Assembly (NCBI RefSeq): GCF_030684315.1
Contig: NC_081369.1
Location: 2,594,689 to 2,658,688, forward strand
Source of the DNA: Stegostoma tigrinum
Taxonomy: Eukaryota
Length of the DNA: 64,000 nucleotides
Direction of reading: 5' to 3'
The translations under genes and the position numbers were made by a program. Shown piece after piece: positions 18,974 through 64,000 of this stretch (position 1 is its first letter; each line of letters begins with the position of its first letter). Under the pieces are notes generated by a model. The model was not told the DNA's origin and did not search any database. It was given only the letters and a program-made list of their open reading frames with translations.

Positions 18974-19102
18974 TCAACTGCTGGCTTTCACTGCTGCATA
19001 CAATGGAGTTGCAGTTGTGTGTTCTGGCTTCATTGTTATCCTGGGACCATTCAAATTCAGAGCAGCATAAGTCAGCTGGCATTTGTTCACGGTATGTTTG
19101 GT
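18974..19102 (-). CDS. Gene 2 terminal cytoplasmic exon (LTYAAL, PLYAAV)
   Basis: gttttacag|acc, 129 nt. Encodes TKHTVNKCQLTYAALNLNGPRITMKPEHTTATPLYAAVKASS*. Confidence 0.88.
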   Translation of the reverse strand, partial: TKHTVNKCQLTYAALNLNGPRITMKPEHTTATPLYAAVKASS

Positions 19103-22100
19103 CTGTAAAACAACAGTGAAAGTAGCTCATCATTGTTTCAAATTTCACTAAAAGTTAAGAATTCTTCAATGTTATCTCAAAACCAAATGATTATAATTAA
19201 GAAAACTGTTACTTTATTCATACATATGAACGGAAAGATAGCTCTGCATATACTGTTCTTTCATCCTGTGGCTTAGGATTTTTAGCATCCTTTGAATGGA
19301 CCAATTCAAGATGAGCATACATTAATCTGTCTTCAGCTCTTTCTTGTTTGCTCTGGAAAGTTAAAGTTTAACATTCATTAATTTCTATTTTCTGGAGCCA
19401 AGAATCAGTTTTCCATAGTAATCAATGACAATTACTTTGTCTCCATGAGTTTACTACCTCTTTGTTACATTCTTAATAGCTTAAAGCTTCTCTATTCAAT
19501 CCCATTTTCTCCACTCGACATAAATCAAAGCTTCCTCATATGCTGATATGACCCTGCTTGCAAACAATGAAACTTCATGGTTGAGTGTGTCAAGACTTGG
19601 AAGAGGAACCCTGCTAAATGCAGTTTCCTGAGCAAAAAAATTCAAATTGGATTAATTCAATATTATCAGTTTCAACATTCATATGGAATCCATTCAACAT
19701 TACATCCTGTAATAAGTTGAAGATGTTGTGTACTTTCTAAATGGAATACGTCTGAATTTCCTTTACAAAGATAAATGAAGTTACTTAAATGCATGTTTCT
19801 TCATTTGGAAATGATAGTACAAATTCAAACTGTGTGTAATAACTAAAATTTTGATTGATGCATTCGTTGGTTTAAAACTGGCATTCCTTTTTTTGCATTA
19901 AGCTTAAACTGAGGAGTTAATTACACTCATAAAAGCAATTGTTTATTTGTGAGATGAATAGTGATGAAATAATGAGATCTCCATCGTTATTTCAACAGCA
20001 CCATTTGAATGACGGCAAATGGAGCACTGAAAGTTTATTTTAGTGAAGATGAACTTGCAATCCAATGAATTTTTCATTCTCTTCTGATCTGCATCTCTGC
20101 ACCTGAGTCAGTGAAACACAAGATTTCACAACCTGACAAGACCAGGGAAATGCATTGGCAAAGCTTAGAATTGTGTTAATGATGACAAATTTAAGGGCTG
20201 TCTAGTGAATGCATGTACTACCTGCAACAAGTAAATGATTAAAAACAAATAAATAGAGATGAATGACAACGGTGTAATTGACATTACAAACACATCACTT
20301 CAGGATGATCAGGAGAACAGATTTTTTAATAATATTCAATGACATTTAGAATGGACAAAGGAAAAGAAGATATGTTAGCATTATGCTAGTAGTAATGGGT
20401 GGGATCAGTGAATAAGGATCTCAGATCAGAATAAGAAAATGAGGAATCTTCTATGGTGGAGCTAAGGTACAGCAAGCAGCAAGGAACATTGGCAGTTGCT
20501 GACAAGCCACAAACAGTAGTAGTAACGTGAAACATACATAAATAAAATGATTTGTGACGTGTGGTACATAGCTTTTGCAACAATCATGGCTGGATTCAAT
20601 TTAGATAAAGGCTCAATAAACTAATGAGCATGAAAGCTGTAAAGGATGAGTTTTTGAGTGTTTCAGGGATAGTTTTCTGGAGCAGTATGTTGAGGAACAG
20701 ACTGGAGTAATATATCCATCTCATAATATGTGACAAAAAGTAGTTATTTAACAATGTTGTTGTAAGAGAATCTTGAAACCTGAGTAACTGTACAATGATA
20801 AAATTATTCATGAAAAATATCACAGTTGCATTTGTAATACAATAAATCATGTCTTTCGATATGTTCTTTTTACATTACTGGCTAAGTTGTACTTAAATCA
20901 AGAAAGACAAATAGGAGGCTGGGTGAGCACAGCAAACCAGGCAGCATCTAGGGGAAAGGAGAAGCCAATGTTTTGGGCATTACCCTTCTACAGGACTGAT
21001 GTGGTGGTAGGGGGAGCTGCAGAAAAAATGGAATGGGGAATGGGAGGGAAACAGAATGGTGGTGATGGATGGATTTTGGTAGTAAGTGTGACAGGATTGG
21101 TAGATGGGAGAGATGAATCTGGTTGGTGGCTGGAAGGGAGGGTCAGAAGGTAAAATGAAACAGAGGAGGTGAGGATGGAAGGGGAGGTGGAAATGGGTGG
21201 GAAGGCTATTTGAAATTGGACAACTCAATTTTGAGTCCTCCAGGCTGTAGGGTGCCCAGGCGGAAGATAAGGTGGTGTTGTTCTGAGCTGATGCGACACT
21301 GGAGGAGGCCAAGAACAGACATGTCTGAGGGGGTTGGGGTGTGGTGAGTAGAAATAGACAGCAACCAGGAGGTTAGGCTTGCCGCTACTGGTGCGGTGAT
21401 GCTCGGTGAAAAGATCACCTGGTCTATGTTTAGTCACATGAATGTATAGAAGACCATATAAGGTGCACCAGGTGCAATAGACCAGGTTGGAGGAGATGCA
21501 GGTAAAGCTCTGTCTCACCGTGAAGGACTGTTTACAGCCCAGGATAGAGGAGAGGGAGATAGTGTGTGGGCAGGCGTTGTGTCTTTTATGGTTACAGGGC
21601 AAGGTAATAAACAGGTTGGAGTGGTTGGTTGGGAGTGTGGTGCAAACTAAGAAGACAGAGAGAGGTGGGGAGTGAAAGATTTCTGGGTAGTGGGGGCTAT
21701 TTGCATTTGGTGGAAGTGTTTGAGGAAGATACATTGGATGCAAAGGCTGGTGGGATGGAAAGTGAGGACAAGGGCCACCCTCTCTTTATTATGTTTGGGG
21801 TGGAGCACGTGGTTAAGAGCTGTCGAGTGGAGAATGGAGGAGGTGTGGTGGAGATCTGTCTGGATGACAGAGGTGGGAAAAGAGCATTGTTTGAAAAAGG
21901 TGGACATCTGGGATGCTTGAGGATAGACATTGTGAGACCAGATGTGACGAACATGAAGAAATTATGAAAACGGGATGGTGTTTTTGCAGGATACAGGGTG
22001 GGAGGATGTGTAGTCCAAGTAGCTATGGGAGTCTGTGGGTTGAGAGTAAATGTCGGTCCATAAACTGTTTCCAGAAATGGAAACACAGAATTGAAGAAAG

Positions 22101-25100
22101 GGAAGGGAGGTGTCTGAGATATGCCAAGGGAATTTGAGCATGAGGTGGAAGTTGTTAGTGAAGTGAAAGTACTGCTCCAGTTCAGCCTGGGTGCAGGATG
22201 CAGCCCCGATGCTGTCATAGATGTAATGGCAGAAAATTTGGGAAATGGTGCCAGTGTACATACTGAAGAGGGACTATTCGACAAAAAGGCAGGAATTGTT
22301 GAGGCCCACGCGGGTGAGCATGGCAATCACTTGATTTGGAGAAAGTGGGAAGAATTGAAGGAAAAGTTATTGAGGGTGAGGACTAGTTCAGCGAGACAGA
22401 GGAAGGTGTTGCTGGAGGGGACCTGAAGCAGTCTGTTGGAGAGTAAAAGACTGAGGGCCTGTAGGACGTCCTTGTAGGGAATAGATGCGTAGAGGGATTG
22501 CACATCCATGTTAAAGATGAATCACTGGGGGCCAGGGAACTGGAAGTTTCCATAGAACATGGTTTGTGCTCCAGATGTTAGTGGGGAATGCCTGGAACAA
22601 AGCGATGAAAATGGAGCCGAGATAGGTCAAGGCAGTAAAACCTTTTGACTTCATACAGATAGATTAAAGCATATTATTTTATTTGCAAAGTTGGATTCAT
22701 TCAGATGAATTTCAAAGCAAAGTTGATGACAAAAAGGCTTACCTCATCTTTGTGTTGAATAGGATTTCTTACTTCTTCCTTTGAACCTGGTGACAATAAA
22801 TTCAGCATTAATTGTCAAGAGAGATGTGATGTTTGCATTCGTCTGTGAGCGAACAAAATACCACATAATTCGAATAACCACACGCTATTTCAGGCAAATT
22901 GGATTGAGAATGTAACTCAAAATGTTGAACACAAATGCAACATATGTCTTGAAGCTGTGGAAAATTACTTCATCAGTGAAATTCACCAGACTGCAGTCAG
23001 ATCTGAAAAGATTGACTTTTGCATTACAAAGCTATGAACGTGAACATGTCATGCTACTGTTGAAGCGAAACAACTGCCTGCAAGTAGTTTCATATGTATT
23101 TATTTTAACTCGACAAGTCAGATTTCATTACCTAATTATGTGAAATTCAGGTTGTTTAATCAACACTTGAATGGAAGTTATTTCAGTTAGTGCATACATA
23201 TATATTCCTATTCGTACCTTTAGTTCTAATGAAGAGAAAACACTTCACAATCATCACTGTGCATAATAGAATTGCAAGTGCTCCAATTGCATACCCAGCA
23301 ACAACAGCAACAATGCTTTTCGAAGCAAAATCTATTAGATGGACATAAAACTAAAATTAGAAATTGTATTGGAAAGCAGAGACATACAAATTTAAATATC
23401 ACATGCTTCATTTCTCATGAAGCCAACTTGTTAGTATTCTAATACTGTTCATGAAATCACATATATCAATTTCTCCAGCCAGTTTTCCGAAATGCCGTCG
23501 GATATAAAAAGGGCAAGTCATAGGGATTTGGGGAAATTACAGCAATGATGAAGAAATTTGAATGATCATCTTTTAATTAATCAAAACAAAGACAATTTAT
23601 GTATCCAACACCAGCCGTATTCGATTGCCACGAGTACAGATCAGGGAACAGTTATGTCGGACAACGTTCTTCAAGATTCACTTTGGAGCATAAGGTCATT
23701 GACACCATCTTAAACAACATTTTTCTCCATGTGCAACCAATCTAACTGTTGAGGGGGAAAATTACATAGTTACAGTATACTCAGCTAACAATGCAGAGCT
23801 CTAAGCTCTTGGCTCTTGGATTTTAATGCCACCAGTGCAGAAGGTGACATTTGAATTTATTAAACACCTGGAATGGTGTTCATGTTAAAAACGCTGGTCT
23901 ATTTGCCACAGGAAAAGTGTTGTTAAACTTGAAAGGGTTCAGCAAAGGTTTACAAAGATGTTGCCAGGCTTGAAGGGTTTAAGCGAAAGAGAGAAAGGCA
24001 GAGTCGGCTGGTCCTTTTTCTCTCTGGAGGTTGAGGGTCAATTTATCGAGGCTTTTATAGTCACAGGGCCCTGGATAGGGTGAATAGCCATTGCCTTTTG
24101 TCCAGGGTAAGGGAGTCAAAATGAGAGGGCATAGGTTTAAGGTGAGAGGGGAAAGATTTAAAAGGGACTCAAGGTGCAATTTTTTTACGCAGAGGGTTGA
24201 GCATGTTTGGAACGAACTTCTAGAGAAGTGGTAGAGGCTGGTACAATTACAACATTCTGAAGGCATCTGGAAAAGTGTATAAGTAAAAAGTGTTTGGAGA
24301 GATATGAAGCAATGCTAGCAAATGCGACTCGATTAATTTAGGATATCTGTTGTAAAGACCATCTCGATTACTCTAAGACCAGGTAGTTTACTTAATGTCC
24401 TTTTGGAAGTCATTCTGCCATCATTAATTGGCCTTCATGTGACTCACTGCACATGCGGTGGTTTTAACTGCTGTCTAGGCAATTACGTACAGACAATAAA
24501 TGTCCGCCAATAATAACACATTCAATGAATTCAAAGAAATAACCAAACTCTGTTTCATAATATGATGAATAGGGAAATTCACCATGCACTGCTTGGTTCC
24601 TGAATGTATGTGAAGATATTCAATCGACTATAAAAGTAATAGCTACGCAAGGGACTGCTCAATGAATAGCAAGACACCAGGAAGCTCAGAGGAACAGGCA
24701 AATCTTGGACCCTTCATTCACAGATCACTGAAGGTGGCAGAGCAGGTAAACAGGATGGTTAAGAAACAGACACAGAAAAGTACAAGGTCACTACAAAACA
24801 ACCTCTTTTAGCTTGGAGCGATACATAATATTGTGTAGTTAAAAGGGAACTGCCTCGTAAGTGTTCTCAGCCTGTTTTTGCCCAGTGGGCTGCCCAGGAA
24901 AGATCTAAAGATACAACCAAAGAGTGAAACAGCATGTAAAATTAGATTCAGAGCAGGTATGATATCAGGGACTGTGCCTCACTCATTTGGACTTCCACCA
25001 TAGGTCGTGAGACAGGTGCTGTGGAGTTGGAGATAGAGCTCCAAGTACTGCCATCGCCAAAGTCCTCGGGGAGTAGGAAGGCAGTGTGAAACTCACATAT

Positions 25101-28100
25101 TAAACATAAATATATATCTGTAGGTTTTCGTCACCAGTTAGCTTTAATTAATGCATTTGTAGTGTAATCGAACAGTTGTAATTCAGATATGTAAAGTACT
25201 TTTACACAATATATTATATGTATTGAAATATGTTAGTAATCATTTTGACCAGAATTTAAAGAGCCAGTTACTTTGGCTGTGGAAGCATTCTGTGTCCCGG
25301 GATGGTCCTGTAATAGAGATTAGTAGGAACTGCAGATCTTGAAGAATTGGAGATAACAAGATGTAGAGCTGGATGAACACAACAGGCCAAGAAGCATCAG
25401 AAGAGCATGAAGGCTGACGTTTCAGGCCCAGACCCTTCTTCAGAAATGCTGAAGAAGAGCCTAGGCCTGAAATGTCAGTTGTCCTGCTCCACTGATGCTG
25501 CTTGGCCTGTTGTGTTCATCCAGCTCCATATCTTGTTATCTCATGATCCTGGAATAATTGGCTCCGTGTGTTAGTGGCCAGTTGTCTGTGGAGAGACCAC
25601 TTAGTTTTGGGAAAGGGATAAGGAGCACAATCCCAAGGGATAATTCTGTGCCATTAAGAACTGTCTGGGGGAAATAGGTTTCCCAATGTAAACCAAGGGC
25701 ATTATCCACATGGGGTGCATCCTGCTGAGTGGCCTCCTGTATGATGCCCCGGGAGGTGCGAGGTTTAAAGGAGGTGAATGGGACATTGACGCTGTGCTGG
25801 TGAGGGCGGCTCAGACCGCTCAGGAAAGAACAGATAAAGCCGAGTAAGAAGCAGATGAGTGCAGCCTGCAACAGAAACAAAAAGTACTGGAAATCACTGC
25901 GGGTCAGGCAGCATCCACAGAGAGAGAGCAAGCTAATGTTTCGGGTCGAGACGACCCTTCATCAGAGCTGGTGAAGCCTGGAGGGGGCAGGATTAATACA
26001 ATGGTGGGCATTTCGGGGAGTGGGGGTATAGTGCTAGGGATAAACGGTGTTGACAGTGCAGTTTAAGTGATCCGAATGTGAGAAGGGAAGGACGTTGGTG
26101 TGTCCAACTGCAGGCCTGGTAAGAACAGACAATCAAACTGTATAAGCTGCAACAAAAACAAAGTTGCTGGAAAAGCTCAGCAGGTCTGGCAGCCTCTGTG
26201 AAGGAGAAAACACAGTTAACATTTCGGCCCATTGTTGATAGGGCCCTCAGTCAGGTCCGACCCATCTCCCGCACTGCTGCCCTCACCCCTTCTCTTCCCT
26301 CCCGCAGCAGCAATAGGCTTCCCCTGTTCTCACCTGCTATGCCACCGACATCCACATCCAGAAGATCATCAGACACCATTTCCACCACCTCCAGCAAGAT
26401 GCCACCATCAGACCCATATTCACCTCCCCTCCCTTGCCCACCTTCCACAGGGACCATTCTCTCTGGGACACCCTGGTCCACACTTCCTTCAGTTCCAACA
26501 CCTCCACACAGCCATATGGTACCTTCTCCAGTAACTGGCGAAAGTGCAATGCCTGCGTATTTACCTCCTCCCTCCTCAGTATCCAAGGGCGAAAACTTCC
26601 CTTCCAGGTGAAGCAACACTTCACCTGCACTTCCTAAAATCTAGTCTACTGCATTCGCTGCTCACAATGTGGTCTCCTCTACATTGGGGAAACAAAGCAT
26701 AGACTTGGCGACCGCTTTGAAAAACATCTATGCTCTGCTCACAAAAAAGATCCTGAACAACCTGTTGCCTGCCACTTCAATGCACCATCTTGCTCCCTGG
26801 CCAACATTTCTGTCTCCTGCTTGTGACAGCATTCCAGTGAAGCCCCAGACAAGCTGGAGGAACAACACCTCATTTTCCACTTGAAGTCTCTACAGCCCTC
26901 CAGACTCAGTATTGAGTTCAATAATTTTAGGGCCCAAACTCTCCCACATCCCAGCCCGTCACCCCACACACCAGACCTTGTTACCACATAGCCTGCCATT
27001 ACACACCCCTTGTTGATAGTCACGAACAGTCCCCATTAACGACTATTCACCCTCCCAGCCTGATCATTAGCAACTCCTTTGTCTGACCAACTGTTTCTCT
27101 CTCTCTTTGTCCTCTATCTTATCGTTTATTCCCTATCCCACCACCTCCCTATTTTCTGCACATAAACTGGCATTTTCCCAGCCACCATCAGTTCAGCGGA
27201 AGGGTCACTGGACACGAAACGTTAACTCTATTTTCCTACTCCACAGAAGCTGCCAGACCTGCTGAGCTTCTCTGGCAACTTTGTTTTTGTTAACGTTTCG
27301 GGTCCAGTGACCCTTCCTCAGATCTGCCCCTTAGAACCGGGGTTGAAAACCCATCAACCCCTCCCATGGTCTGAGACCCCAATTCCGTCTTAGATGCTCC
27401 TTCTCAGAAAAACATGAGAATATCTCAGAGTTCCTTCTGTACCCTACATGAGAGGAACTGGAGCAGACGTGGACAGTGAGTAATCGCCTCGACTGGGAAG
27501 GTGATCGGGACACTGAGATGTGACCACTAGTGGGAATTAATGCAGGGTCCCAGGGGCAAAACATCTCTGACAGAATTCATTGGAGAAATGGAAATAAACA
27601 GCACATTGTGCTCTTGCTTGATACCTTCCAGAAACATGGGAACTAAAGTGACAATGAATAGATTTGAGAGAACAGATCCACTGGCACTTTGGGCACTGGT
27701 GAGATTGGCAAAGGGGAATGCACCACTGTGGATGTTATCTATGTTAATATGCAGTGTAAACGAAAATATTGTTGGGATGGATGTTGTTGTGGGCATCAAA
27801 ATATGAACCCCAATTGGAAAGTCTTGTTTTTGTGAATGAAGGATGAATGCAGTAGTTGGGAAAGCTAACTGGGACCCCAGTACATTCCATTCTTTCATGA
27901 ATAATTAATAGGAAGCAGCATTGAGGGCACAAGGAGATCACAGACACTAGTGAAGGGTCAGCGTCAGCAGGGGTGTATGACCTGTTGTCTTCCTTTATAA
28001 CGTCCTTGTGTGGTCAGTCCAGAAATCGGGTGATAACTGGAGAATGATGGTCATTGACTGATAGTTAAGCCAACACACCCCAGCATTGGCCATTGGTTCT

Positions 28101-33434: not shown

Positions 33435-33539
33435 AGCGACTAAGAAAATCTGGCAGATCATACATTGGATGTAAAAAAGAGAACTGATGAAAGTTTGTTG
33501 GAAAATCAGTTATGCATCGATTTTAGTCACTTGCGTCAA

Positions 33540-33640
33540 CATGACGTCAAGAAGCACGTGACTAATTCCTTGCCGAGTGTGCAATATGCATGGGTTTGCA
33601 TATCAGATCTTGTTGTGGTAACAGTGAGCGGAAGTGATAA
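33540..33640 (-). promoter_or_regulatory. Putative cassette A promoter: RUNX (TGTGGT 33614) + ETS (GCGGAAGT 33628) block, E-box CACGTG 33555, CRE TGACGTCA 33542
   Basis: Lies 100-200 nt upstream of the leader ATG. The 29-nt block 33605-33633 is identical in all three cassettes. Confidence 0.5.
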
Positions 33641-33889
33641 CACGGACAGACAACTGCAGTTATAGCAAAATGTAGGGCGAGATGGTGAAGCTCCCGCTAT
33701 TGTCCGTATCCACTCACATGACCCACCAGGTTTGGGTACAATGTCAGTCGGACCAATACAAAACTCCATTCCTTAAGTTTTTACCAGTGAACACATGACG
33801 ATAATATCCTTTCCTTAAGAACATTTTTCTCAGAATTTCAGCCGCAGGGTACAACTGAGGCCGTTTCAAAGGAAACACATGTTTCGGTT

Positions 33890-34165
33890 GCATGGTGGCT
33901 CAGTGGTTGTCACCGCTGCCTCCCAGTTCCAGGGATCCGTGTTCGAGATGGTGACTGTGTCGGGTTTGCACATTCTTCCCGTGTCTGAGTGGGTTTTTTT
34001 TTTACCGTTTCCTCCACAGTCCAAAGATGTGCAGGATCGGTTGATTGACCATTGTCCGCAGTGTCCAGGGATATGCAGGCAAAGGTGGGTCAGCCGCGGG
34101 AATGCGGTGTGGCGGTGTGGTGGGATAACAGGGATAGGGTGGGATGGTCTTCAGAGAGTCGATGC
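33890..34165 (+). mobile_element. HE1-like SINE upstream of cassette A; equivalent-position copies at about 48181-48455 and 59045-59320
   Basis: Head catggtggctcagtggttg at the same position in all three cassette flanks. Confidence 0.7.
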
Positions 34166-37365: not shown

Positions 37366-38074
37366 TTCTGTCCGTTCAGTGCTTTTGTTAATGTGCTGTG
37401 CATAAAAGGAGAGAGAAACGACTGCGTTTGTGCTTCGAAGTGACTTCACTTATGTCAGAATAGGAGGTATATGTATTTAATTAACAGAGGCCCTTTCAAT
37501 CGCCATTTCAATGCAGCAGCTATCTAAAAAATATCAGAGATAGTAGGAACTACCGATGCTGGAGTCTGAGATAACCAGTTTGAGACTGCAGTGTGGATCT
37601 GGAGGAACACAGCAGGCCAGGCAGAATCAGTGCAGCAGGATCCCGACTCGAACGTCAGCTTTCCTGCTCCTCTGTTGGTGCCTGGCCTTCAAAATATCAT
37701 CTTGCGTTTCTGACTACAGGTTCTCATGTTGGATACTAATGGGAGTATCCAGTGCAAGGCCTTCTCAATATGTCGACCTCAAAATTCTAGGAATTGTCAC
37801 ATGTAAGGAACATGTGAGAAATTTGTTTATTCTTTCACGGATAAATTATCGCTGAATGTTCATAAACCGTGATTTTTGACAAGACATCGGCTTAGGATCG
37901 CTACAGCGCAGAAAGAGCCCGTTCGGCTCATCGACTGCACACTAGCGCTGCGAACAACATCCCATCCAATGGCCAGAGTGAATATTCATCAAATATATGA
38001 TTTACCTCTGATATTTAATAAGCCCTGGTGTTGTCCAGACACTAAATAAATTGTTCCTGTCTTTGAATCATATA

Positions 38075-48300: not shown

Positions 48301-51300
48301 TCCTCCACAGTCCAAAGATGTGCAGGATCGGTTGATTGGCCATTGTCCGCAGTGTCCAGGGATATGCAGGCAAAGGTGGGTCAGCCGCGGGAATGCGGTG
48401 TGGCGGTGTGGTGGGATAACAGGGATAGGGTGGGATGGTCTGCAGAGAGTCGATGCACTGCACTCTGGAGATTCTCTGATTCAAAGGCGTTTGCAATTTA
48501 ATTAGAGTTTGAAAGATACCAGGTGTCAGTAAGTAACTGATGTAAATCATTCATTCAACTGAATGAGTATTTGCCCTGGCTCTTCTACCAATGACTGAAT
48601 TGTGTAAAAACGCAATATGCTTATTTCTTGCAGTGGAGGTACCGGCGATTGATTCAGGTGGACAAAGTCAGAAGTCGCAAGACAGGTGTATTTGGAAGGC
48701 TTTCAGAGCACTGCACTTCACCCGACGAAGCAGCAGCGACTCGAAAGCTTGTGATTTCAAACAAACGTGTTGGACTTTGGCCTGGTGTCGTCTGACTTCT
48801 GACTTGCTTCTTGCAGGTTGCCGTTTGTCTCATTAAATGAAATTGCTGGCACGCTGCTTGGTGACTGATGTGGATTTGCATAATTTTGTTGATGTTTCGA
48901 GCAGCCATGGGACAAAGTTTCCACAAAGTTGTGGATCAGTTATTAGTTCAGACTGTTCCTGCCCTTTAGTTATGAAAGCACATTTGGACGTTAATTGAGA
49001 TGAGTTCAATTAAGATGTCCATTGCAAATACATAATTGTGAACAACCTTTTGTTTATTCACTGTTTTGGCGAATCCCTGACAATTTATCTCAAAGGCAGT
49101 GTTTCCTTCTTGAAACTTTAAGACAATGAATGTCTTGTCTGCCAATTTCACTGCTTTATCCTGATGCCGTCCTTCGCAGTTCTATGGGAGCTGTAGCCAT
49201 TCAGGAGAGTCGAGAGATTTCAGCAAAGTCCTGAATTCTACTGTTTAGAGAAAACTAATGCATTTCCGAGCAACGATCCGGATCAACACAGAGCTATCCC
49301 TTGCACTGTTTCTGAAACCCTCCTGTATTCCCTCATCAGTTGCTCACTCCGTTTATCTGCGTCACGTTAACAACAATTAAGAATTAAGAAGGCAGCCCGA
49401 GACGGCTTGCTCAGGGGCATTCAGGTGTTTCCAATAAATACTGGCCTTGCCAACAGCGTCCACATTCTGTTAAAGCATAACAATAAAAGTTGTGTTGTCA
49501 GTTTCATTTCAAGAGCTAATTCTATTTTGATATCTGGAAAGAACATAAAAATCCTAAGAGGGCATTAAAAAATAATAAGATTCAGGGGCTATTATTGCAC
49601 TGGTTTGCTCATAACATTGTTACATAAAATTTCCACTTTTCTGCTTATGCATGAGAGTCGATGCTGCAAAGTTAATTGGGTGGAATGAGTTCGTGCTCTA
49701 ATTTTAGGCTAGGAATCAGACAAAGAGCTGCGGATACCGGGGATCTGAAACAAAAACAGACATTGCGATGGAAACGTAATAGTTTTGAGATGATGCACTG
49801 GTGCTCGAATCAGATACTTTTTGTTTGTCGAGCAAAGAGCGCCAGCTATCGTGATGTTTATCGTTACGCAACAAAAATAACAGAAAGCTAAAACTGATCA
49901 AACCAGACAGTGTAAATTAAAAGTGCTTGGAATTTCTGTAAAAGAAGTATGAAACCTGCAGTCGAGGGAAGTTGTATTCCGTGACCTGAGGTGAACTCTA
50001 GAATGTTTCCACTTATTTGTCGGCTCGGCTGAGTGGAACCTATTCCACAATAAACAGACATGTTGCCGGCTCATAGCCTGCTCTCTGAGTCAGGAGAACG
50101 AACATGTCCGTTCAGTGGGTACCTGCATGGGCCCAAGCTATGCCTGCCTCTTTGTAGGGTCCGTGGAACAATCCCTCTTCCAAAGCTACACTGGCCCTTT
50201 CCCCATCTGTTCCTCCGTGACATTGATGACTGTTTTGGCGCCGCCTCCTGTTCCCACCAGGAGCTCGAACAGTTCATCCACTTCACTGACACCTTCCGCC
50301 CTAACCTTCAGTTTATCTCTCTCTCCTTCCTGGACCTCTTTGTCTCCATCTCTGGCATCCACCTGGAAACGGATATCCATTTTAAACCTACCAACTCCCA
50401 CAACTACCTGGAACATTCCTCCTCTCACCCACCTTCCTGTAAAAATGCCATCCCCTATTTCCAATTACTTTGCCTCCGCTGCATCTGCTCCCGAGATGAA
50501 GCATTCCACTCCTGAACATCCCATATGCCTTTTTTTTTCCAAAAATCACAACTTCCCTTCCACGGTGATCAAAAATGCCCTGGACTGTGGCTCCTGCATT
50601 TCCTGCAACTCATTCCTCACATCCCCTATTCGCAATAATAACCAAAACAGAATTCCCCCTCGTCCTCACGTACCACCCATCAACTTCCAAATCCAACGCA
50701 TCATCCTCCGACGTTTCCGCCGCCTGCAATCGGACCCCACCACCAAAGACATTTTTACCCTCCCCACCCTTATATGCTTTCCAGAGGGACCACTCTCTCC
50801 GCGACTCCCTTTTCCGCTCCACACTCCCCTCCAGCCCCACCACCCAGGGCACTTTTTCCTGCAAACGAAGCAAGTGCTACACCTGCCCCTATACCTCCCT
50901 CCTCATCCCAATCCCAGGCCCTGGGAAGGCTTTCACATCAAACAGATGTTCACCTGCACATCTTTCAATGTTATGTGCTGTAACCGCTGTTCCCGTTGTG
51001 GCCTCGTCTACATCGGGGAAACAAAGCAAAGGCTTGGGGATCACATTGGCGAACACCTACGCTCTGTTCGCAACAGACAAGTACACTTCCCATTCGCGAA
51101 CCATTTCAATTCCACCCGTCCCCACCCCCAGACGACATGCCTATCCTGGGCCTCCTGCTTTGCCACAATGACGCCACCCGAAAGATGCAGGACCAGCATC
51201 TCATATTTCGCTTGGGAACTCTCTCGCCCAATGGTATCAATGTGGATTTCACAAGCTGCAAAATCTCCCCTCCCCCGGCCACTTGCCAAAACCAGCCCGG

Positions 51301-53622
51301 CTAGTCCCCGCATCCCTAACCATTCTTCCCACCTCAAGCCCCACTCCCATCCCCTACCCATTAACCTCATCCAGCCCCCCTGACCAGTCCGTCCTCCCTG
51401 GACTGACCTATTCCACGCCCCAATTCCCCACCTACATTCACGTTCGCTGGTTCTAACCCCACCTGTTTGACCTGTCTGTCTCCTGTCACCCTATCTTCTA
51501 CTTTATCCATCTTCTACCCGCCTCCCCCGTCTCTCCATTTATTTCAGGATCCCCTTCCCCTCCCCCATTTCTGAAGAAGGGTCCCGACCTGAAACCTCAA
51601 ACTTTCCTGCTCCTCTGATGCTGCTGGGCCTGCTGTGTTCATCCAGCTCCGCACCGTGTTATGTCCATTCAGTGCTTTTGTTAATGCGTTGTGCATAAAA
51701 GGAGAGAGAAACAACTGCGTTTGTGCTTCGAAGTGACTTCACTTATGTCAGAATAGGAGGTATATGTATTTAATTAACGGAGGCCCTTTCAATCGCCATT
51801 TCAATGCAGCAGCTATCTAAAAAATATCAGAGATAGTAGGAACTACCGATGCTGGCGTCTGAGATAACCAGTTTGATACTGCAGTGTGGATCTGGAGGAA
51901 CACAGCAGGCCAGGCAGAATCAGTGCAGCAGGATCCCGACTCGAACGTCAGCTTTCCTGCTCCTCTGATGGTGCCTGGCCTTCAAAATATCATCTTGCGT
52001 TTCTGACTACAGGTTCTCATGTTGGATACTAATGGGAGTATCCAGTGCAAGGCTTTCTCAATAAGTCGACCTCAAAATTCTAGGAATTGTCACATGTTAG
52101 GAACATGTGAGAACTTTGTTTATTCTTTCACGGATAAATTATCGCTGAATGTTCATAAACCGTGATTTTTGACAAGACATCGGCTTAGGATCGCTATAGC
52201 GCAGAAAGAGCCCGTTCGGCTCATCGACTGTACACTAGCGCTGCGAACAACATCCCATCCAATGGCCAGAGTGAATATTCATCAAATATATGATTTACCT
52301 CTGATATTTAATAAGCCCTGGTGTTGTCCAGACACTAAATAAATTGTTCCTGTCTTTGAATCATATAATGCTTGCAGTGCGGTGGGAGGCCCTTCCGCCC
52401 ATCCAGTCTGCACAGATGTTGCAAAGAGCATCCCACCCAATCCCCGTAAACCCACATTCACCATGGCTCACCCGCCTCTTCTACACACACCAGGTCAATC
52501 CATCTAACCTGCACACCTTTGGGCTATGGGAGGAAGCCGGAGCACTCGGAGGAAATTCACACAGACATGGGGAGAATGTGCAAAGTCCACGCAGACAGTT
52601 GGCTGAGGCTGGAAGCAAACCCCATTCGCTGGCGCTATGAGGCTAATGACTGTGCCACCGTGCTGTACAATTGGAAACGTGTGATAACATGGTTAATAAA
52701 CTGATAGAATTATTTGAGACAATAAGGTGCGGAGCTAGATGTACACTGCAGGGCAAGCAGCATCAGAGGAGCAGGACAGCTGACGTTTCGGATTGGGCTT
52801 GGAAGTGAAGTAATCCAATGTAGAGTTAGAATCCTCAAGCTAAACAAAGGGGGAAAAACAGTATTGTGAAGGATGATTTGATTACCATTCGTGTGTAACT
52901 TCATTAAAAGACATGACGGTGGTGAAGCATTGGTGAATATGTTAGGAATGAATGCAGGCTGTGCAACACCACATCGAGACCTGGTGCAACATATACACTA
53001 GGAAGTTTAGAGCAACAATGGCGGGCGATATAAATGTTCATTAATGTGGTGAGACTTGAACCCAGGCTTTCTGGATCAAAAGTACTGCGCTATTGTCATC
53101 GGCCAGAACCATACTCGGACCAGTGCCTTTGTGGCTGGCATAACTAGGTAAATAGAGAAGGTTTTAAACTGAATCGTGGGGGCAAAGGATCACAGGTGGG
53201 AAGATGTTGTCTATCAAAAGCAAATGCAAGTGAAGAAGGGAAAATAATACTAAGGGAAATGAGCGACAAAGAAAGGCACAATTGGCAACAAGAGACAGTG
53301 ACAAGGAATGCATTACCAATCAAGTTGATGTACGCCAAAGTTAACAAAAAAAGAAGAAACTAGAGCATTGTCGAAGTAAGTTGGCCCATTGAGACCATAA
53401 CAACCCCTGAAGAGCATCCCACACCAGACTCACACTCCCAACCCTATCCCTGTAACCCAGTATATCCCAAGGCTAATACACTTGTCTTGAACAATCCCAG
53501 ACAACATAGACAAGTTTGCATGGCCATTCCGCCTAACACGCGCATCTTCGGACAGTAGGAGGAAACCGGCACACCCAGAGGAAACACGCACAGACAAAGG
53601 CGGAGTGTGCAAACTCCACCCA
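39330..53622. repeat. 14.29-kb tandem segmental duplication, unit 2
   Basis: Every ORF and repeat of 25045-39329 recurs about 14,285-14,294 nt downstream. The unit ends inside a SINE that continues past 53622. Confidence 0.95.
45768..47726 (-). CDS. Cassette B: intact leader (47726-47672), V (47367-47056) and C1 (46073-45768) exons with no TM exon of its own
   Basis: Copy of cassette A offset by about 14,291 nt. Frames are open and splice sites canonical; five amino-acid differences from A (four in V, one in C1). Confidence 0.8.
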
Positions 53623-54810: not shown

Positions 54811-55016
54811 CCTGATCCAAATCATTAATGAGGTCAATAGCTGAGTGAAAATTGAACTGAGTATCATTGAGTTCGTTGTGGAAGGACCAGTGCTAAGGTT
54901 GATGTAAAATCAAAATTATAAGCTAGAGCATAAACCAAACATATACAGGCTTGAATATCATGTTCACAAACATATGCTTTTTTTTAATATTACGTGTCTT
55001 AGTCATAAGGCTGTAC

Positions 55017-56809
55017 TTTTTTTGCAACTGTGTAAGTGGCATTTGCTGGAAATGAGTTCGAAACATAATCGCCTTGACAAGTGCAAACTGTGTCAAACTC
55101 GTCTGCGCCTGACACATAGAAGGAGGTGACAACCTCCCAATGTCCTTTGCTGTTGACTCGTTCATTTGTAAATCTAACTGTATCGTTTTTGTGCCAAGCA
55201 ACACTGAAGTCATTTTGGTCATTGGCAGATGTCCTGCAGAGATAAAGGTTTTTTTTCTGACAATACTGGCACAATTTTCAAGGGATCTGTTGAAACTGCG
55301 TTGTAAATAATATAATTCAGATAAATCTAAACGTTAGTATACTAATCCAAAACTTCAATGATTTAATGAACAAGCTATCAGTAAATATGGGGGACGGTTT
55401 TTTCATTAGTAGTTGTTATTTATTTGGAATAAATAATAAATGTGTCTGATAGCAACGCCCTGATTCAATTTCGGCACCATTCCCAACTCCAGCAAGATTG
55501 TTTTCTATCTTATATAAATATTAATTCATGCAAACATGTTTGAGATGTTAATCTGCATCCTTCTCTTTGCAATCAGTTTGGAACAGGATTCTAGATCGTC
55601 AAAACTGTGGCAGCCATGGTCCAAACGAAGGGGACTCACATTATCCATCTTTCTGAGAAATATGAGTTTCAATACCATTTGCTGATACAGTGCAGTTGCT
55701 GGATTGTGTGGAGTCGGTGGTGACACTTTCTTTATTTTTACCACATTATTGAACGTCATTCCAAAGAATTGAGTTATTTTATACTCACTGCATATGTTTA
55801 TGAAAAAAGTAACTGCTAACTCCCTTCACTGTTCATTAGAACCAAAAACGAACATTTAAATGTTGTAACACTAACCATAGACAACAAGTTGAGTAGCTTG
55901 TTTGTTAACCTTTTTTTGCTGATATTTGACCATACAGTAATATGCTCCAGTGTCCAGGATGGCCACATTGAAGAGAAGAAGGTGCCCACCACCTTTCCAT
56001 ACTTTGAAGAATTTTTTGCCGTCGTCCTCCAGATGCCCCTCACCGTCTCACCACAAAATAATGGTTACTTTTGAGTGGTTGACTTCAACGGGGAACGGGC
56101 ATGGCAGGTTAGCTGATGCAGTTGTCAGTGTTTGTACTTTATGACGTTCGGATTAACTTTGTCCAAAGTACACAGAGCAACTGTTAACAAAAGTTACAAA
56201 AACAAAGTTGCTGGAAAAGCTCAGCGGGTCTGGCAGAATCTGTGGAGGAGAAAACAGAGTTAACGTTGCGGATCTGGTGATCCTTCCTCAGAACTAGGGA
56301 AGAGTCACCAGACCCGAAACGTTAACTCTGTTTTCCCCTCCACAGATGCTGCCAGACCTGCTGAGCTTTTCCAGCAAACTCTGATTTTGTTCCTGATATA
56401 CAGCATCTGCATTTCTTTTGTTTTTTGTCAACAGAAGTTATATGCATACCCATTAAACAGGGAAGATGAACTGCACCATGAAATAATGCAATTAAACTGA
56501 TACTCTCATACAGTAGCAACTTAGCACATTTTACTCTTTGAATTCTGCTCCACTATCTGAATTTCTGCCCGAACTGAACGATTGCAATTTTTTTTCCACT
56601 TATCCAGATGATCCTGAGGACATGAAAAACGTACAAAGAGGTGCCCGATTATCAGTCAATTATCAGTTCAATTATTCTTCCGTCTGGATAAACCACATTT
56701 CAAACACTGCAAGAAGGACCATGTGCCTGGATACGAAATGCACAAAAAACATAAGTTCCACAGTGATCCACTCACAAACATAGCGACAAAGAAACTCTGG
56801 CAGATCATA
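55017..56809 (-). pseudogene. Cassette C: degenerate leader-V-C1 paralogue (C1 about 55017-55295, V 55876-56180, leader about 56727-56809)
   Basis: The V exon is 305 nt, with a frameshift and an in-frame TGA (LW*DGE). C1 is frameshifted before CRTS. The leader donor is mutated GTACAT>GCACAT. PLE insertions sit at the V acceptor and the leader. Confidence 0.87.
56197..56425. mobile_element. Hairpin mini-element of inverted family-B PLE termini, inserted in the V-exon acceptor tract of cassette C
   Basis: Inverted arms around about 56293. 15-nt TSD tgttaacaaaagtta / tgtcaacagaagtta. Confidence 0.8.
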
Positions 56810-56867
56810 GTAAAATGTGAGGCTGGATGAACACAGCAGGCCAAGCAGCATCTCAGGAGCACAAAAG

Positions 56868-56899
56868 CTGACGTTTCGGGCCTAGACCCTTCATCAGAG
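56868..56899 (-). ncRNA. Minimal hammerhead ribozyme motif
   Basis: Reverse complement of the motif at 58474-58505. Confidence 0.7.
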
Positions 56900-58473
56900 A
56901 GGGGGATGGGGGGAGGGAACTGGAATAAATAGGGAGAGAGGGGGAGGCGGACCGAAGATGGAGAGTAAAGAAGATAGGTGGAGAGGGTGTAGGTGGGGAG
57001 GTAGGGAGGGGATAGGTCAGTCCAGGGAAGACGGACAGGTCAAGGAGGTGGGATGAGGTTAGTAGGTAGCTGGGGGTGCGGCTTGGGGTGGGAGGAAGGG
57101 ATGGGTGAGAGGAAGAACCGGTTAGGGAGGCAGAGACAGGTTGGACTGGTTTTGGGATGCAGTGGGTGGGGGGGAAGAGCTGGGCTGGTTGTGTGGTGCA
57201 GTGGGGGGAGGGGATGAACTGGGCTGGTTTAGGGATGCAGTGGGGGAAGGGGAGATTTTGAAACTGGTGAAGTCCACATTGATACCATATGGCTGCAGGG
57301 TTCCCAGGCGGAATATAAGTTGCTGTTCCTGCAACCTTCGGGTGGCATCATTGTGGCAGTCCAGGAGGCCCATGATGGACATGTCATCAAGAGAATGGGA
57401 GGGGGAGTGGAAATGGTTTGCGACTGGGAGGTGCAGTTGTTTGTTGCGAACTGGGCGGAGGTGTTCTGCAAAGCGGTCCCCAAGCCTCCGCTTGGTTTCC
57501 CCAATGTAGAGAAAGCCGCACCGGGTACAGTGGATGCAGTATACCACATTGGCAGATGTGCAGGTGAACCTCTGCTTAATGTGGAATGTCATCTTGGGGC
57601 CTGGGATGGGGGTGAGGGAGGAGGTGTGGGGACAAGTCCTGCGGTTGCAGGGGAAGGTGCCGGGTGTGGTGGGGTTGGAGGGCAGTGTGGAGCGAACAAG
57701 GGAGTACCTTCCCCTGCAACCGCAGGAAATGCTACACTTGTCCCCACACCTCCTCCCTCACCCCCATCCCAGGCCCCAAGATGACATTCCACATTAAGCA
57801 GAGGTTCACCTGCACATCTGCCAATGTGGTATACTGCATCCACTGTACCCGGTGCGGCTTTCTCTACATTGGGGAAACCAAGCGGAGGCTTGGGGACCGC
57901 TTTGCAGAACTCCTCCGCTCAGTTCGCAACAAACAACTGCACCTCCCAGTCGCAAACCATTTCCACTCCCCCTCCCATTCTCTTGATGACATGTCCATCA
58001 TGGGCCTCCTGCACTGCCACAATGATGCCACCCGAAGGTTGCAGGAACAGCAACTCATATTCCGCCTGGGAACCCTGCAGCCATATGGTATCAATGTGGA
58101 CTTCACCAGTTTCAAAATCTCCCCTTCCCCCACTGCATCCCTAAACCAGCCCAGTTCATCCCCTCCCCCCACTGCACCACACAACCAGCCCAGCTCTTGC
58201 CCCCCACCCACTGCATCCCAAAACCAGTCCAACCTGTCTCTGCCTCCCTAACCGGTTCTTCCTCTCACCCATCCCTTCCTCCCACCCCAAGCCGCACCCC
58301 CAGCTACCTACTAACCTCATCCCACCTCCTTGACCTGTCCGTCTTCCCTGGACTGACCTATCCCCTCCCTACCTCCCCACCTACACCCTCTCCACCTATC
58401 TTCTTTACTCTCCATCTTCGGTCCGCCTCCCCCTCTCTCCCTATTTATTCCAGTTCCCTTCCCCCATCCCCCT

Positions 58474-58505
58474 CTCTGATGAAGGGTCTAGGCCCGAAAC
58501 GTCAG
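58474..58505 (+). ncRNA. Minimal hammerhead ribozyme motif
   Basis: ctCTGATGAaGGGTctagGCCCGAAACGTCag. Confidence 0.7.
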
Positions 58506-59979
58506 CTTTTGTGCTCCTGAGATGCTGCTTGGCCTGCTGTGTTCATCCAGCCTCACATTTTATTATCTTGGAATCTCCAGCATCTGCAGTTCCCATTATC
58601 TCTGGCAGATCATACATTGGATATAAAAAGACGACTGATGAATGTTTGTTGGGACACCAGTTATGCATCGATCTTAATCACTTGCACCTGTATGAAATCA
58701 AGAAGCACATAACGAGTTCCTGACGAATGGACAACATGCATGCGTCTTCATATAAGATCTTGTTGTGGTAACAGTGAGCGGAAATAACAACATGGACAAC
58801 TACTGCAGTTGTAGCCAAATCTAGGCCCAAATGGTGAAACTCCTGTCAGAGCCCTGATCCACTCACAGGACCCACCAGGCTTGGGTGCAATATCAGTCTG
58901 ACCAATACAAAACTCTATCCTTTAAGTTTTTACCCGCATCCACACAATGATAATATCCTTTCCTGGAGAATATTTTTTCTCATAATTTCAATTCAGCCAC
59001 AGGATACAACTGAAGCCCCTTCAAAGAAAACACATGTTTCAGTGGCATGGTTCTCAGTGGTTGGCACTGCTGACTCACAGTGCCAGGGATCCATGTTCGA
59101 GATGGTGACTGTCTGTGTGAGGTTTGCACATTCTTCCTGAGCCTGAGTTCAGGAAGTTTTGCCACTTCCTAAAGCAGTCCAAAGCTGTGCAGGTTCAGTG
59201 GTTTGGTCATTGTCTGCAGTATCCAGGGATATGCAGGTAAAGGTGGGTTTGTGGCGGGAATGTGGTGTGGCAGTGTGGTGTATTACCGGGGATAAGGTGG
59301 GATGCTTTTGGAAGTGTCATTGCATTACACAATAGGGATTTTATGATTCAAAGGCATTTGTAATTTAATTAGGATTTGAAAGATACCAGGAGTTATTAGG
59401 TAACTGACGGAAATCATTCATTCAACTTAATGAGTATTGAGGCTGGAATCAAACCCGGTCCCTGGTGATGTGAGGTAACAGTGTGCCACAATTCCACCCA
59501 ACTGGAACCTTGCGATGACATTGATACATAAACTGATAGAAGTATTCATTTAGATTGGAAGGAAAGTAATCCAATTTGGTTGACAGCAATGCGGTTGACT
59601 CTGGGCTTTAGAAATGGGCAATAAGTGCTGACCGAGCCTGCTCACAACTCATGAATCAAACATTAACTGCCCTGCATGACAGAGGGAATCTGGATCATTG
59701 AATGGTGCAAAACTGTGGATTTGAGAATCAGTTATGAACAAATAATCAGCATCATGTACATGAAATGCTCAGAAGTATCTAATGTGCATAATGCATCCGA
59801 AGTGCTGAGGTAGATGCATTTTATTCTTTCATTATCCATTCATGATGTGTGGTCCTCAGTCGGTGAGCCAACAATTATTGTCCATCCCAGCTACTTAACA
59901 GAAGTATGAATTGAAGTAAGATTCTTGAATGACGACTGTTCATTGTGCATACTTAGACACGAAGTACCTGCATAAATTC

Positions 59980-63925: not shown

Positions 63926-64000
63926 ATATTGTTGGAAAATTTCAGCAGGTCTGGCAGCTTGTGGAGCGAAAGTTGTCACAAATCACACAAAACCAGGTTA

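What the first reader, a model, noticed from the sequence alone, without database searches (positions are those of the whole stretch)
18974..58800. Several promoter-leader-V-C1 cassettes in tandem upstream of one shared TM + ITIM tail
Seen: on the minus strand, cassettes C (pseudogene), B and A each have a promoter-like flank, leader, V and C1. I could find only one TM exon and one set of cytoplasmic exons (23331-18974), downstream of all three. The 14.29-kb duplication breakpoint (25045) lies in the C1-TM intron, so B was born without a tail, and I found no TM remnant after C. All A and B ectodomain exons are phase 1. Inference: the locus could use a variable-cassette/constant-tail arrangement like clustered protocadherins or UGT1A, here for an inhibitory Ig receptor. 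It could also build longer ectodomains: V(B)-C1(B)-V(A)-C1(A), or V(B)-C1(B)-C1(A), which is the V-C1-C1 layout of mammalian SIRP-alpha.
Basis: partly seen in the sequence, partly recalled or inferred. Interest (0 to 1): 0.8.

Follow-up and report, generated by a model that had tools for sequence, protein, structure and literature searches.

The report
Partly duplicated shark inhibitory receptor gene
A shark gene for an inhibitory immune receptor has had its front half (start, two antibody-like domains) copied in tandem, so two intact fronts and one older dead one sit upstream of a single membrane anchor and signalling tail; this looks like an ordinary recent duplication accident, not a built-in system for swapping receptor heads, and no RNA data were available to show how the extra front is used.

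Summary
On the minus strand there is one complete seven-exon SIRP-like gene: leader, V-like, C1, TM and three cytoplasmic exons with four tyrosine motifs. A 14.29-kb head-to-tail duplication (2.1% diverged) copied its upstream DNA, leader, V, C1 and part of the C1-TM intron. This made an intact tail-less copy B. An older relative of the same 5' module, C, is dead: frameshifts, stops, damaged donors and a 1.8-kb insertion in its leader. No second TM or tail exists on that strand.

The protocadherin/UGT1A reading is not supported by the anatomy. Each cassette has three exons, and V and C1 carry acceptors. A transcript from promoter B would therefore by default splice C1(B) to V(A) and give V-C1-V-C1 on the shared tail, not a head swap. 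Only one extra cassette is intact. The older tail-less one decayed. 73 of 76 family proteins examined have one C1.

The junction therefore has no read-level check.

Earlier scan notes describe this gene family elsewhere in the same genome, but not this arrangement. Best reading: a recent 5'-partial tandem duplication in a birth-and-death receptor cluster.

The parts
25041..39329 (-). Duplication unit A: 6.4 kb of the C1-TM intron, C1(A), V(A), leader(A) and 5.87 kb of upstream DNA
   Evidence: Self-BLAST, 14,302 columns at 97.8% identity; 2.1% substitutions
39326..53622 (-). Duplication unit B, head-to-tail with unit A. The junction at 39326-39329 has about 1 nt of microhomology. The far breakpoint (53622) lies inside a SINE-like repeat.
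47672..47753 (-). Leader exon of B (ATG at 47753; donor CAG|gtacat; no AG acceptor upstream)
   Evidence: tblastn 27/27 identical to leader A
47056..47367 (-). V-like exon of B, 312 nt, phase 1-1. Differs from A by 4 amino-acid changes (K>I, K>Q, R>H, V>I) and 1 synonymous change. Donor ACG|gttagt.
   Evidence: Pfam Ig_3/ig/I-set above cut-off, V-set below
45768..46073 (-). C1 exon of B, 306 nt, phase 1-1. One replacement (V>A) and 1 synonymous change against A. Donor AAG|gtaaga.
   Evidence: Pfam C1-set 42.6 bits
33380..33461 (-). Leader exon of A
32764..33075 (-). V-like exon of A. Acceptor ...ttttgttaacag; donor ACG|gttcgt (6/9 consensus, weaker than B's 7/9).
   Evidence: Pfam
31477..31782 (-). 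C1 exon of A
   Evidence: Pfam C1-set 42.8 bits; PDB hits to Ig constant domains and SIRP-alpha 2wng
23218..23331 (-). The only minus-strand TM exon (no charged residue in the helix), phase 1-1
22743..22786 (-). Small cytoplasmic exon (44 nt, SKEEVRNPIQHKDE, phase 1 to 0) that links TM to the tyrosine-motif exons
   Evidence: Conserved with D at 4167-4213; collinear with the tail of protein P0153
19224..19352 (-). Cytoplasmic exon with LMYAHL and TVYAEL. The GAG|GT donor seen in D is CT here; the next GT lies 18 nt further on.
18974..19102 (-). Last exon with LTYAAL and PLYAAV, then the TGA stop
55010..56808 (-). Pseudogene cassette C. Leader 56808-56727 (donor GT>GC). V about 56180-55872 (frameshift, stops). 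C1 about 55296-55010 (frameshift, shifted donor).
56809..58600 (.). About 1.8-kb inverted-duplicated retroelement piece inserted in leader C, flanked by a 14-bp target-site duplication that includes the ATG. It cuts C's upstream flank off from its leader.
   Evidence: 98-99% identical to 14326-15238 in both orientations; target-site duplication
58614..59438 (-). Upstream flank of C, 82% identical to the flank upstream of leader A/B (33462-34280)
57..7083 (+). Context: convergent paralog D with its own tail. V 57-332, C1 1905-2195, TM 3667-3777, cyt1 4167-4213, cytX 6706-6816, last exon from 6960 (premature stop before the fourth tyrosine motif).
   Evidence: Pfam V-set and C1-set

Best explanation
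The locus is one SIRP-like inhibitory receptor gene (A): leader, V-like domain, C1 domain, uncharged TM, and a tail with four tyrosine motifs. Its 5' 14.29 kb was duplicated head-to-tail by a non-homologous event with about 1 nt of microhomology, roughly 2% divergence ago. The duplicated piece holds 5.9 kb of upstream DNA, the leader, V, C1 and the first 6.4 kb of the C1-TM intron. The upstream copy, B, is an intact promoter-side half gene without a tail. Further upstream, C is a much older duplicate of the same 5' module and is now dead.

How it most likely works:
- Promoter A makes the normal two-domain receptor.
- If promoter B fires and the polymerase reads on, leader A cannot be included because it has no acceptor.
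- The first acceptor that the C1(B) donor meets is that of V(A), 12.7 kb downstream and in phase.
- The default product is therefore L(B)-V(B)-C1(B)-V(A)-C1(A)-TM-tail, a four-domain receptor on the same inhibitory tail.
- Other possible fates are a short soluble V-C1, by polyadenylation in the intron just after C1(B), or silence.

It is not a dedicated variable-head/constant-tail system.

Shown: the anatomy, the phases, the duplication and the decay of C. Inferred: every statement about transcription and splicing.
For: - Duplication geometry and a clean junction without N.
- At most 67% of the 31-mers of 45700-47800 are shared with copy A, yet four DNA runs of one sample hold 0.82-0.87 of the sampled words. 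B-specific letters are therefore in reads.
- Exon borders and phases.
- The leader exons lack an AG acceptor, while V(A), C1(A) and TM acceptors are of similar quality: 13/18, 11/18 and 12/18 pyrimidines.
- There is no second TM or tail on the strand.
- C shares non-coding homology with A: upstream 82%, leader 90%, leader-V intron 78%, and the start of the V-C1 intron 75%. D shares none in the V-C1 intron and the C1-downstream stretch, the only non-coding stretches of D compared (its upstream lies off the window). C carries several disabling lesions. So an earlier tail-less copy in the same position was not kept.
- A and B differ in coding sequence by 5 replacement and 3 silent changes, pN/pS 0.49, p = 0.39 against neutrality. 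Synonymous divergence (0.019) is about the same as non-coding divergence (0.021).
- The family norm is one V and one C1 per tail: D here, and 73 of 76 family-like proteins.
- Precedent for duplicated phase-1 Ig exons both being placed in a model: skate XP_032892405.1 is V-C1-C1-TM-ITIM with C1 copies 99/102 identical.
- Duplications of two adjacent exons are reported as recurrent in shark IgSF genes (PMC12227049, passages read).
Against: - There is no transcript evidence of any kind. None of the 19 listed runs is on record as RNA.
- No protein of 57-180 aa matches V(B).
- The two full-length searches returned no protein closer to A or B than 81% in C1.
- B is fully intact, and two of its four V replacements fall in the loop between the second cysteine and the G strand. 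This placement rests on canonical Ig motif positions, not on a model. It is compatible with a used, diversifying head.
- V(A)'s donor (gttcgt) is weaker than V(B)'s (gttagt), which could favour skipping of A's V.
- The geometry does meet one defining feature of variable/constant clusters: a single shared downstream exon set.
- Polyadenylation hexamers are no denser in the B-to-A gap (1.0-1.2 per kb) than in A's own intron (1.5 per kb). This neither blocks nor proves read-through.
Confidence: 0.7

Rival explanations
1. One reading: a variable-cassette/constant-tail locus. Promoters A and B (formerly C too) are chosen alternatively, and each V-C1 head is spliced on its own to the shared TM and ITIM exons, as in clustered protocadherins or UGT1A.
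For: One TM and tail set lies downstream of three leader-V-C1 modules. All junctions are phase-compatible. B is intact, with 4 of its 5 V-exon changes being replacements. A, B and C share a conserved upstream flank.
Against: The cassettes have three exons, and V(A) and C1(A) have good acceptors that lie between C1(B) and TM. The defining single-first-exon design is therefore absent (PMC1885805 passages). Only two units are intact. C decayed. B is only 2.1% diverged, and its coding changes do not depart from neutrality. The family norm is one head per tail. There is no RNA evidence.
Confidence: 0.07
2. B is transcribed but ends in the intron just after C1(B). This would give a short secreted V-C1 protein (reading into the intron adds GKIV and then a stop) that could act as a soluble decoy. 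The shared tail would never be used by B.
For: Read-through of the C1 donor gives ...TKEGKIV* (ORF 45757-46119). ATTAAA at 45536 and AATAAA at 45473 lie within 300 nt of the donor. B has no TM exon for 22 kb.
Against: The same hexamers sit after C1(A), at 31245 and 31181. If A works as a membrane receptor, they are mostly ignored there. The C1 donor is the strongest in the gene, 8/9. There are no RNA data.
Confidence: 0.1
3. B is an assembly artefact: two divergent haplotypes of one cassette placed in tandem.
For: The presence of B-specific words in DNA runs would also fit a heterozygous haplotype. The transition:transversion ratio of the A/B differences is oddly low, 134:166.
Against: There is no N in the window. 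The junction joins two sequences that share only about 1 nt, so an assembler could join them only through reads that span it. 2.1% divergence over 14 kb with only 11 indel events is far above the heterozygosity I recall for sharks (a recollection, not tested here). The flanks outside the unit are not duplicated.
Confidence: 0.08

Closest known systems
Variable-first-exon clusters (clustered protocadherin alpha/gamma, UGT1A, GCNT2)
   Same: Tandem, similar 5' units in one orientation lie upstream of a single shared set of 3' exons. The units share a conserved upstream flank. Pseudogene units occur in the array.
   Different: In those clusters each variable unit is one large first exon with its own promoter and only a donor, spliced separately to the constant exons (PMC1885805, passages). 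Here each unit has leader + V + C1, and the downstream unit's V and C1 have acceptors. There are two intact units, not a dozen. No transcripts are known.
Mammalian SIRP-alpha (PTPNS1)
   Same: Ig ectodomain with an N-terminal V-type domain and C1-set domain(s), an uncharged TM, and a tail with four tyrosine motifs in two pairs. C1(A) matches the SIRP-alpha ectodomain 2wng at E = 1.9e-10. RefSeq names the shark relatives 'tyrosine-protein phosphatase non-receptor type substrate 1-like'.
   Different: Here there is one C1, not two; SIRP-alpha's V-C1-C1 layout is recalled. Many antibody constant domains score better than SIRP-alpha. The V-like domain has only 55 residues between its cysteines and falls below the Pfam V-set cut-off. 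CD47 binding and orthology were not tested.
Shark, ray and chimaera 'SIRP-like' V-C1 receptor family (e.g. Stegostoma tigrinum LOC125459911, protein P0153)
   Same: Same exon order and a collinear tail. Identity to A: C1 81%, TM 68%, cytX 72%, last exon 67%.
   Different: No database protein is identical to A, B or D. The partial tandem duplication is specific to this locus among what I could see.
Amblyraja radiata XP_032892405.1 (P0015), V-C1-C1-TM-ITIM
   Same: A family member in which a recent tandem duplication of a phase-1 Ig exon (copies 99/102 identical) is included twice in the predicted mRNA. This precedent supports the 'both copies included' default.
   Different: There only the C1 exon is duplicated, inside the gene. 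Here the duplicate also carries a leader and upstream DNA. The skate entry is a prediction whose RNA support I could not see.
Two-adjacent-exon duplications in shark IgSF genes (UrIg2 C2-C9, IgW, IgNAR)
   Same: Pairs of neighbouring Ig-domain exons duplicated in tandem lengthen the ectodomain (PMC12227049, passages).
   Different: Those are established, expressed, internal duplications. This one is recent, includes the first exon, and has unknown expression.

Membership tests
Variable-first-exon / shared-constant-exon cluster (Pcdh, UGT1A type) | A single shared set of constant exons downstream of all variable units | tested here: met
   Only one TM and tail set on the minus strand
Variable-first-exon / shared-constant-exon cluster (Pcdh, UGT1A type) | Each variable unit is a single 5'-terminal exon with a donor but no acceptor | tested here: not met
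   Each unit has leader + V + C1. V and C1 have AG acceptors with 13/18 and 11/18 pyrimidines. Definition from PMC1885805 passages.
Variable-first-exon / shared-constant-exon cluster (Pcdh, UGT1A type) | Each unit has its own active promoter | not testable with these tools
   B carries 5.87 kb of A's upstream DNA at about 98% identity, and C carries 0.8 kb at 82%. No transcription start data exist.
Variable-first-exon / shared-constant-exon cluster (Pcdh, UGT1A type) | Each unit is spliced separately to the constant exons in mRNA | not testable with these tools
Variable-first-exon / shared-constant-exon cluster (Pcdh, UGT1A type) | An array of several intact, diversified units | tested here: not met
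   Two intact units, 96% (V) and 99% (C1) identical in protein. The third is a pseudogene.
SIRP family (SIRP-alpha type) | V-type N-terminal domain followed by C1-set domain(s) | tested here: met
   Pfam C1-set 42.8 bits. The V-like exon passes the Ig_3, ig and I-set cut-offs but falls below the V-set cut-off. There is one C1, not two.
SIRP family (SIRP-alpha type) | Cytoplasmic tail with paired ITIM-type tyrosine motifs | tested here: met
   LMYAHL, TVYAEL, LTYAAL and PLYAAV read directly from the exons. The motif definitions are recalled.
SIRP family (SIRP-alpha type) | Orthology to tetrapod SIRP genes and CD47 binding | not tested
   No tree or synteny analysis was done. Antibody constant domains outrank SIRP-alpha in the PDB search.
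Cartilaginous-fish SIRP-like V-C1 receptor family | Leader / V / C1 / TM / short cytoplasmic exons in this order, with sequence similarity over the whole length | tested here: met
   Exon by exon against P0153: C1 81%, TM 68%, cytX 72%, last exon 67%. Relatives were found in Stegostoma, Heterodontus, Hemiscyllium, Rhincodon, Amblyraja, Callorhinchus and others.
Tandem segmental (partial-gene) duplication | Two directly adjacent head-to-tail copies with a unique junction, and flanks not duplicated | tested here: met
   Read-level confirmation was not obtained.

The most novel reading that the evidence does not exclude
B is a live second promoter-leader-V-C1 head. Its transcripts reach the shared exons and give productive mRNA. 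The product would be either a four-domain V-C1-V-C1 inhibitory receptor or, less likely, V(B)-C1(B) joined straight to the tail. The locus would then be a newborn example of an innate immune receptor gaining either a longer ectodomain or alternative heads on one ITIM tail through a single 5'-partial duplication.

My estimates: about 0.2 for any productive B-to-tail mRNA, and about 0.05 for exclusive head choice.
Probability: 0.2. Interest if true: 0.6.

Novelty: new member of a known kind. Interest (0 to 1): 0.3.

Why it matters
If B is used, the locus would show a multi-domain or multi-head Ig receptor at the moment it forms. It would also give a direct test of how phase-1 Ig exon modules are taken up after duplication. 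That process is usually inferred only from old, fixed cases such as CD4/LAG-3-type four-domain receptors (recalled) and UrIg2, IgW and IgNAR.

As it stands, the finding mainly documents birth-and-death turnover in a large receptor family of cartilaginous fish. That family is auto-annotated, but I found no paper on it. The finding also flags that gene predictors may fuse or split such cassettes. Two examples are the C1-V-C1 and two-TM models P0004 and P0154.

Tried and rejected
1. RNA evidence. The look-up of sequencing runs listed 19 runs, and none is on record as RNA. Three small runs of the same species label hold about 0.00 of the words. This is no proof of silence.

2. Read-level check of the 39326 junction with DNA contigs of two species.

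3. Looking for an annotated or transcript-derived protein of A or B.
- Two full-length relatives were used as queries. P0011 gave 17 hits among 2,590 candidates. P0153 gave 3 hits among 2,091 candidates.
- The V(B) exon alone gave no candidate of 57-180 aa.
- Nothing closer than 81% in C1 was found. I cannot tell whether RefSeq leaves the locus unannotated or the collection simply lacks it.

4. Hidden TM or tail remnants after C or B, and a decayed second C1 between C1(A) and TM. None was found.

5. C as an unrelated old family member. I rejected this. C's proteins are about equally distant from all relatives at 35-47%. However, its non-coding flanks match A and not D.

6. Selection tests on A against B. 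There are too few changes: 5 replacement and 3 silent.

7. Polyadenylation hexamer density as a barrier between B and A. It was uninformative.

8. A human SIRPB1 analogy. The one paper that held the terms was irrelevant, so I make no claim.

9. Literature on this shark family. Searches (listings and abstracts only) gave no description of it. The library lacks most subscription journals, and supplements were closed.

10. The spliced model was never joined.

Full report
WHAT IS THERE.

The window has no N. Its largest self-match is a direct, immediately adjacent repeat. Positions 25041-39329 align with 39326-53622 over 14,302 columns at 97.8% identity. A global alignment gives 300 substitutions and 18 gap columns (11 indel events) in 14,284 positions, which is 2.1%. 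Divergence ranges from 0.8% to 3.9% per kb.

The junction reads ...CTCCACCC|AGTACTGCC.... The two parental breakpoints share only about one base, and the far one lies inside a SINE-like repeat. This is a non-homologous tandem duplication, not unequal crossing-over between repeats.

THE GENE.

- Cassette A: leader 33461-33380, V-like exon 33075-32764, C1 exon 31782-31477.
- Cassette B: leader 47753-47672, V 47367-47056, C1 46073-45768.
- Shared tail: TM exon 23331-23218, cytoplasmic exon 19352-19224 (LMYAHL, TVYAEL), and last exon 19102-18977 (LTYAAL, PLYAAV) with TGA at 18976-18974.

V, C1 and TM are phase 1-1. TM ends in phase 1 and the 19352 exon starts in phase 0, so one exon was missing from the model. 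Comparison with the paralog's intron found it at 22786-22743. It is 44 nt, encodes SKEEVRNPIQHKDE and has good AG/GT borders. The tail of Stegostoma protein P0153 is collinear with this seven-exon model.

Pfam calls the second domain C1-set (42.8 bits). The first domain passes the general Ig models but falls below the V-set cut-off. In the PDB, C1 matches antibody constant domains best, and SIRP-alpha (2wng) at E = 1.9e-10.

I never joined the exons. All searches were exon by exon, and the joined step was left out.

ONE TAIL ONLY.

I ran tblastn with A's TM and cytoplasmic peptides. I then added D's TM and cytX peptides and the tails of six relatives, at E up to 50. The targets were the four stretches where a second tail could hide: 47754-55016, 33462-45767, 23332-31476 and 56809-64000. 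Only noise came back, with a best E of 0.049.

The left breakpoint at 25041-25045 lies in the 8,145-nt C1-TM intron. B therefore carries 5.87 kb of upstream DNA, the leader, V, C1 and 6.4 kb of intron, and no tail.

The window also holds a complete convergent paralog D on the plus strand with its own TM and tail. Earlier scan notes place further intact V-C1 genes nearby (untested here).

CASSETTE C.

C is dead.
- Its leader donor is GC instead of GT.
- The V body is out of frame with its acceptor and holds stops.
- C1 has a frameshift and a shifted donor.
- A roughly 1.8-kb inverted-duplicated retroelement piece, 98-99% identical to 14326-15238, sits in the leader. It is flanked by a 14-bp target-site duplication that includes the ATG.

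At the protein level C is about equally far from all relatives, at 35-47%. Its non-coding DNA, however, matches A:
- upstream flank 82%
- leader 90%
- leader-V intron 78%
- first 190 nt of the V-C1 intron 75%

D shows no such match. The V and C1 exons of C and A are only 70% identical, less than the flanks.

C is therefore an older duplicate of the same 5' module. Whether it once had a tail cannot be told. Either way, a tail-less module in this position was not preserved.

IS B USED, AND HOW?

This could not be tested.
- No listed run is on record as RNA (0 of 19).
- Neither the two full-length searches (17 hits among 2,590 candidates; 3 hits among 2,091) nor the V(B) exon search (no candidate) found a protein of A, B or D. 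The closest is P0153, at 81% in C1.

What the DNA runs do show is that B's own letters exist in reads. Only 67% of the 31-mers of 45700-47800 are shared with A, yet four runs of one sample hold 0.82-0.87 of the sampled words. That does not separate a true duplication from a second haplotype. A gap-free junction between sequences that share about one base argues for a real duplication, because an assembler can make that join only through spanning reads. That last step is my inference.

SPLICE LOGIC.

Both leader exons lack an acceptor. The V(A), C1(A) and TM acceptors are of similar quality, with 13, 11 and 12 pyrimidines of 18. The C1 donor is the strongest in the gene, at 8/9.

A transcript started at B and reading on would meet V(A)'s acceptor first, after 12,692 nt. 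C1(A) follows at 13,985 nt and TM at 22,436 nt. All three joins are in frame. By ordinary exon definition the expected product is V(B)-C1(B)-V(A)-C1(A)-TM-tail. The first residues of the V(A) exon normally form the end of the signal peptide. In this product they would act as a short linker.

Nothing resembles the design that makes protocadherin and UGT1A heads mutually exclusive. In those clusters each variable unit is one first exon with its own promoter, spliced separately to the constant exons (PMC1885805, passages read).

A soluble V-C1 form is also possible. Read-through adds GKIV and then a stop, and there are hexamers at 45536 and 45473. The same signals follow C1(A).

Polyadenylation hexamers are no denser between B and A than in A's own intron.

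SELECTION.

A and B differ by one silent change in the leader. V has four replacements and one silent change. C1 has one replacement and one silent change. Overall pN/pS is 0.49, with p = 0.39 against neutrality. Silent divergence is 0.019, about the same as the non-coding value of 0.021. B's intactness is therefore uninformative at this age.

Compared by eye with P0153 and D, the derived states appear to be split between A and B. This is my reading, not a computed result.

V(B) keeps the donor gttagt that is also seen in C, while V(A) has gttcgt.

FAMILY CONTEXT.

A phmmer scan of 1.84 billion representatives with C1(A) gave 562 proteins at E <= 0.001. The best 150 were listed.

I dropped those longer than 700 aa and those below 36% identity to C1(A) or C1(D) over at least 60 residues. 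That left 76 family-like proteins. 73 have one C1-like domain and 3 have two.
- P0015 is skate XP_032892405.1, V-C1-C1-TM-ITIM, with C1 copies 99/102 identical.
- P0004 is elephant-shark XP_007902905.1, a C1-V-C1 model.
- P0154 is Hemiscyllium, a fusion of two neighbouring genes with two TM segments.

One head per tail is therefore the norm. When a phase-1 Ig exon is duplicated inside a gene, models include both copies.

A 2025 paper reports that duplications of two adjacent Ig exons are recurrent in shark IgSF genes (PMC12227049, passages read). I found no paper on this SIRP-like family (searches; listings and abstracts only; supplements closed).

VERDICT.

B was indeed born without a tail, and all joins would be in frame. 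However, the locus fails the defining single-first-exon feature of variable/constant clusters, has only one extra intact cassette, and shows that an older one decayed.

The best-supported reading is a recent 5'-partial tandem duplication in a birth-and-death receptor cluster. Its testable default consequence is a four-domain isoform from the upstream promoter.

Earlier notes of this scan describe the family elsewhere in the same genome, but not this arrangement.

Noticed in passing
window 19224-19242 (minus strand): In gene A the position where paralog D has its exon-end donor (GAG|GT after ...YAE) reads CT. The next GT is 18 nt further on (TAT|gtatga, 5/9). If it is not used, the frame stops two codons later (…SYV*) and the last exon with two tyrosine motifs is lost. 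Proteins P0153 and P0152 pass from YAE straight to TK…, as expected from the D-type donor.
   Followed up: partly
window 6960-7083 (plus strand): The last exon of paralog D has a premature TAA (…SKSKH*) and a frame change before the fourth tyrosine motif (PVYAEV). D would keep three of the four motifs.
   Followed up: partly
window 56796-56809 and 58600-58613: A 14-bp target-site duplication (it includes the ATG of leader C) flanks a roughly 1.8-kb insert. The insert is made of two inverted copies, 98-99% identical to 14326-15238, so the insertion is recent and lies in an already old pseudogene.
   Followed up: yes
window 25350-25542 (copy at 39635-39827): A near-perfect hairpin (94-nt arms, 86% complementary, 5-nt loop) lies about 300 nt inside the left duplication breakpoint. 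It may be relevant to how the duplication arose.
   Followed up: no
window 25041-53622: The A/B differences have an unusually low transition:transversion ratio: 134:166 overall, and 67:81 for isolated changes. They are also clustered: 89 neighbour gaps of 10 nt or less, against 57 expected. The cause is unexplained. Gene conversion from other family members is one possibility.
   Followed up: partly
window 17400-18973 (minus strand): There is no AATAAA or ATTAAA in the 1.5 kb downstream of gene A's stop codon, so the 3' end of the gene is undefined.
   Followed up: no
window 55872-56180 and 55010-55296 against 32764-33075 and 31477-31782: Between C and A the Ig exons (70% nt identity) are more diverged than the upstream flank (82%), the leader (90%) and the leader-V intron (78%). 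This hints at fast, possibly diversifying, evolution of the ectodomain exons in this family.
   Followed up: partly
window 8958-9783, 12594-16800, 20983-22663, 26123-27035, 35834-37367, 49995-51662: Many reverse-transcriptase-like ORF fragments and a recurrent SINE-like element fill the introns and intergenic DNA of the cluster.
   Followed up: no
They were kept out of all later search calls.
   Followed up: no
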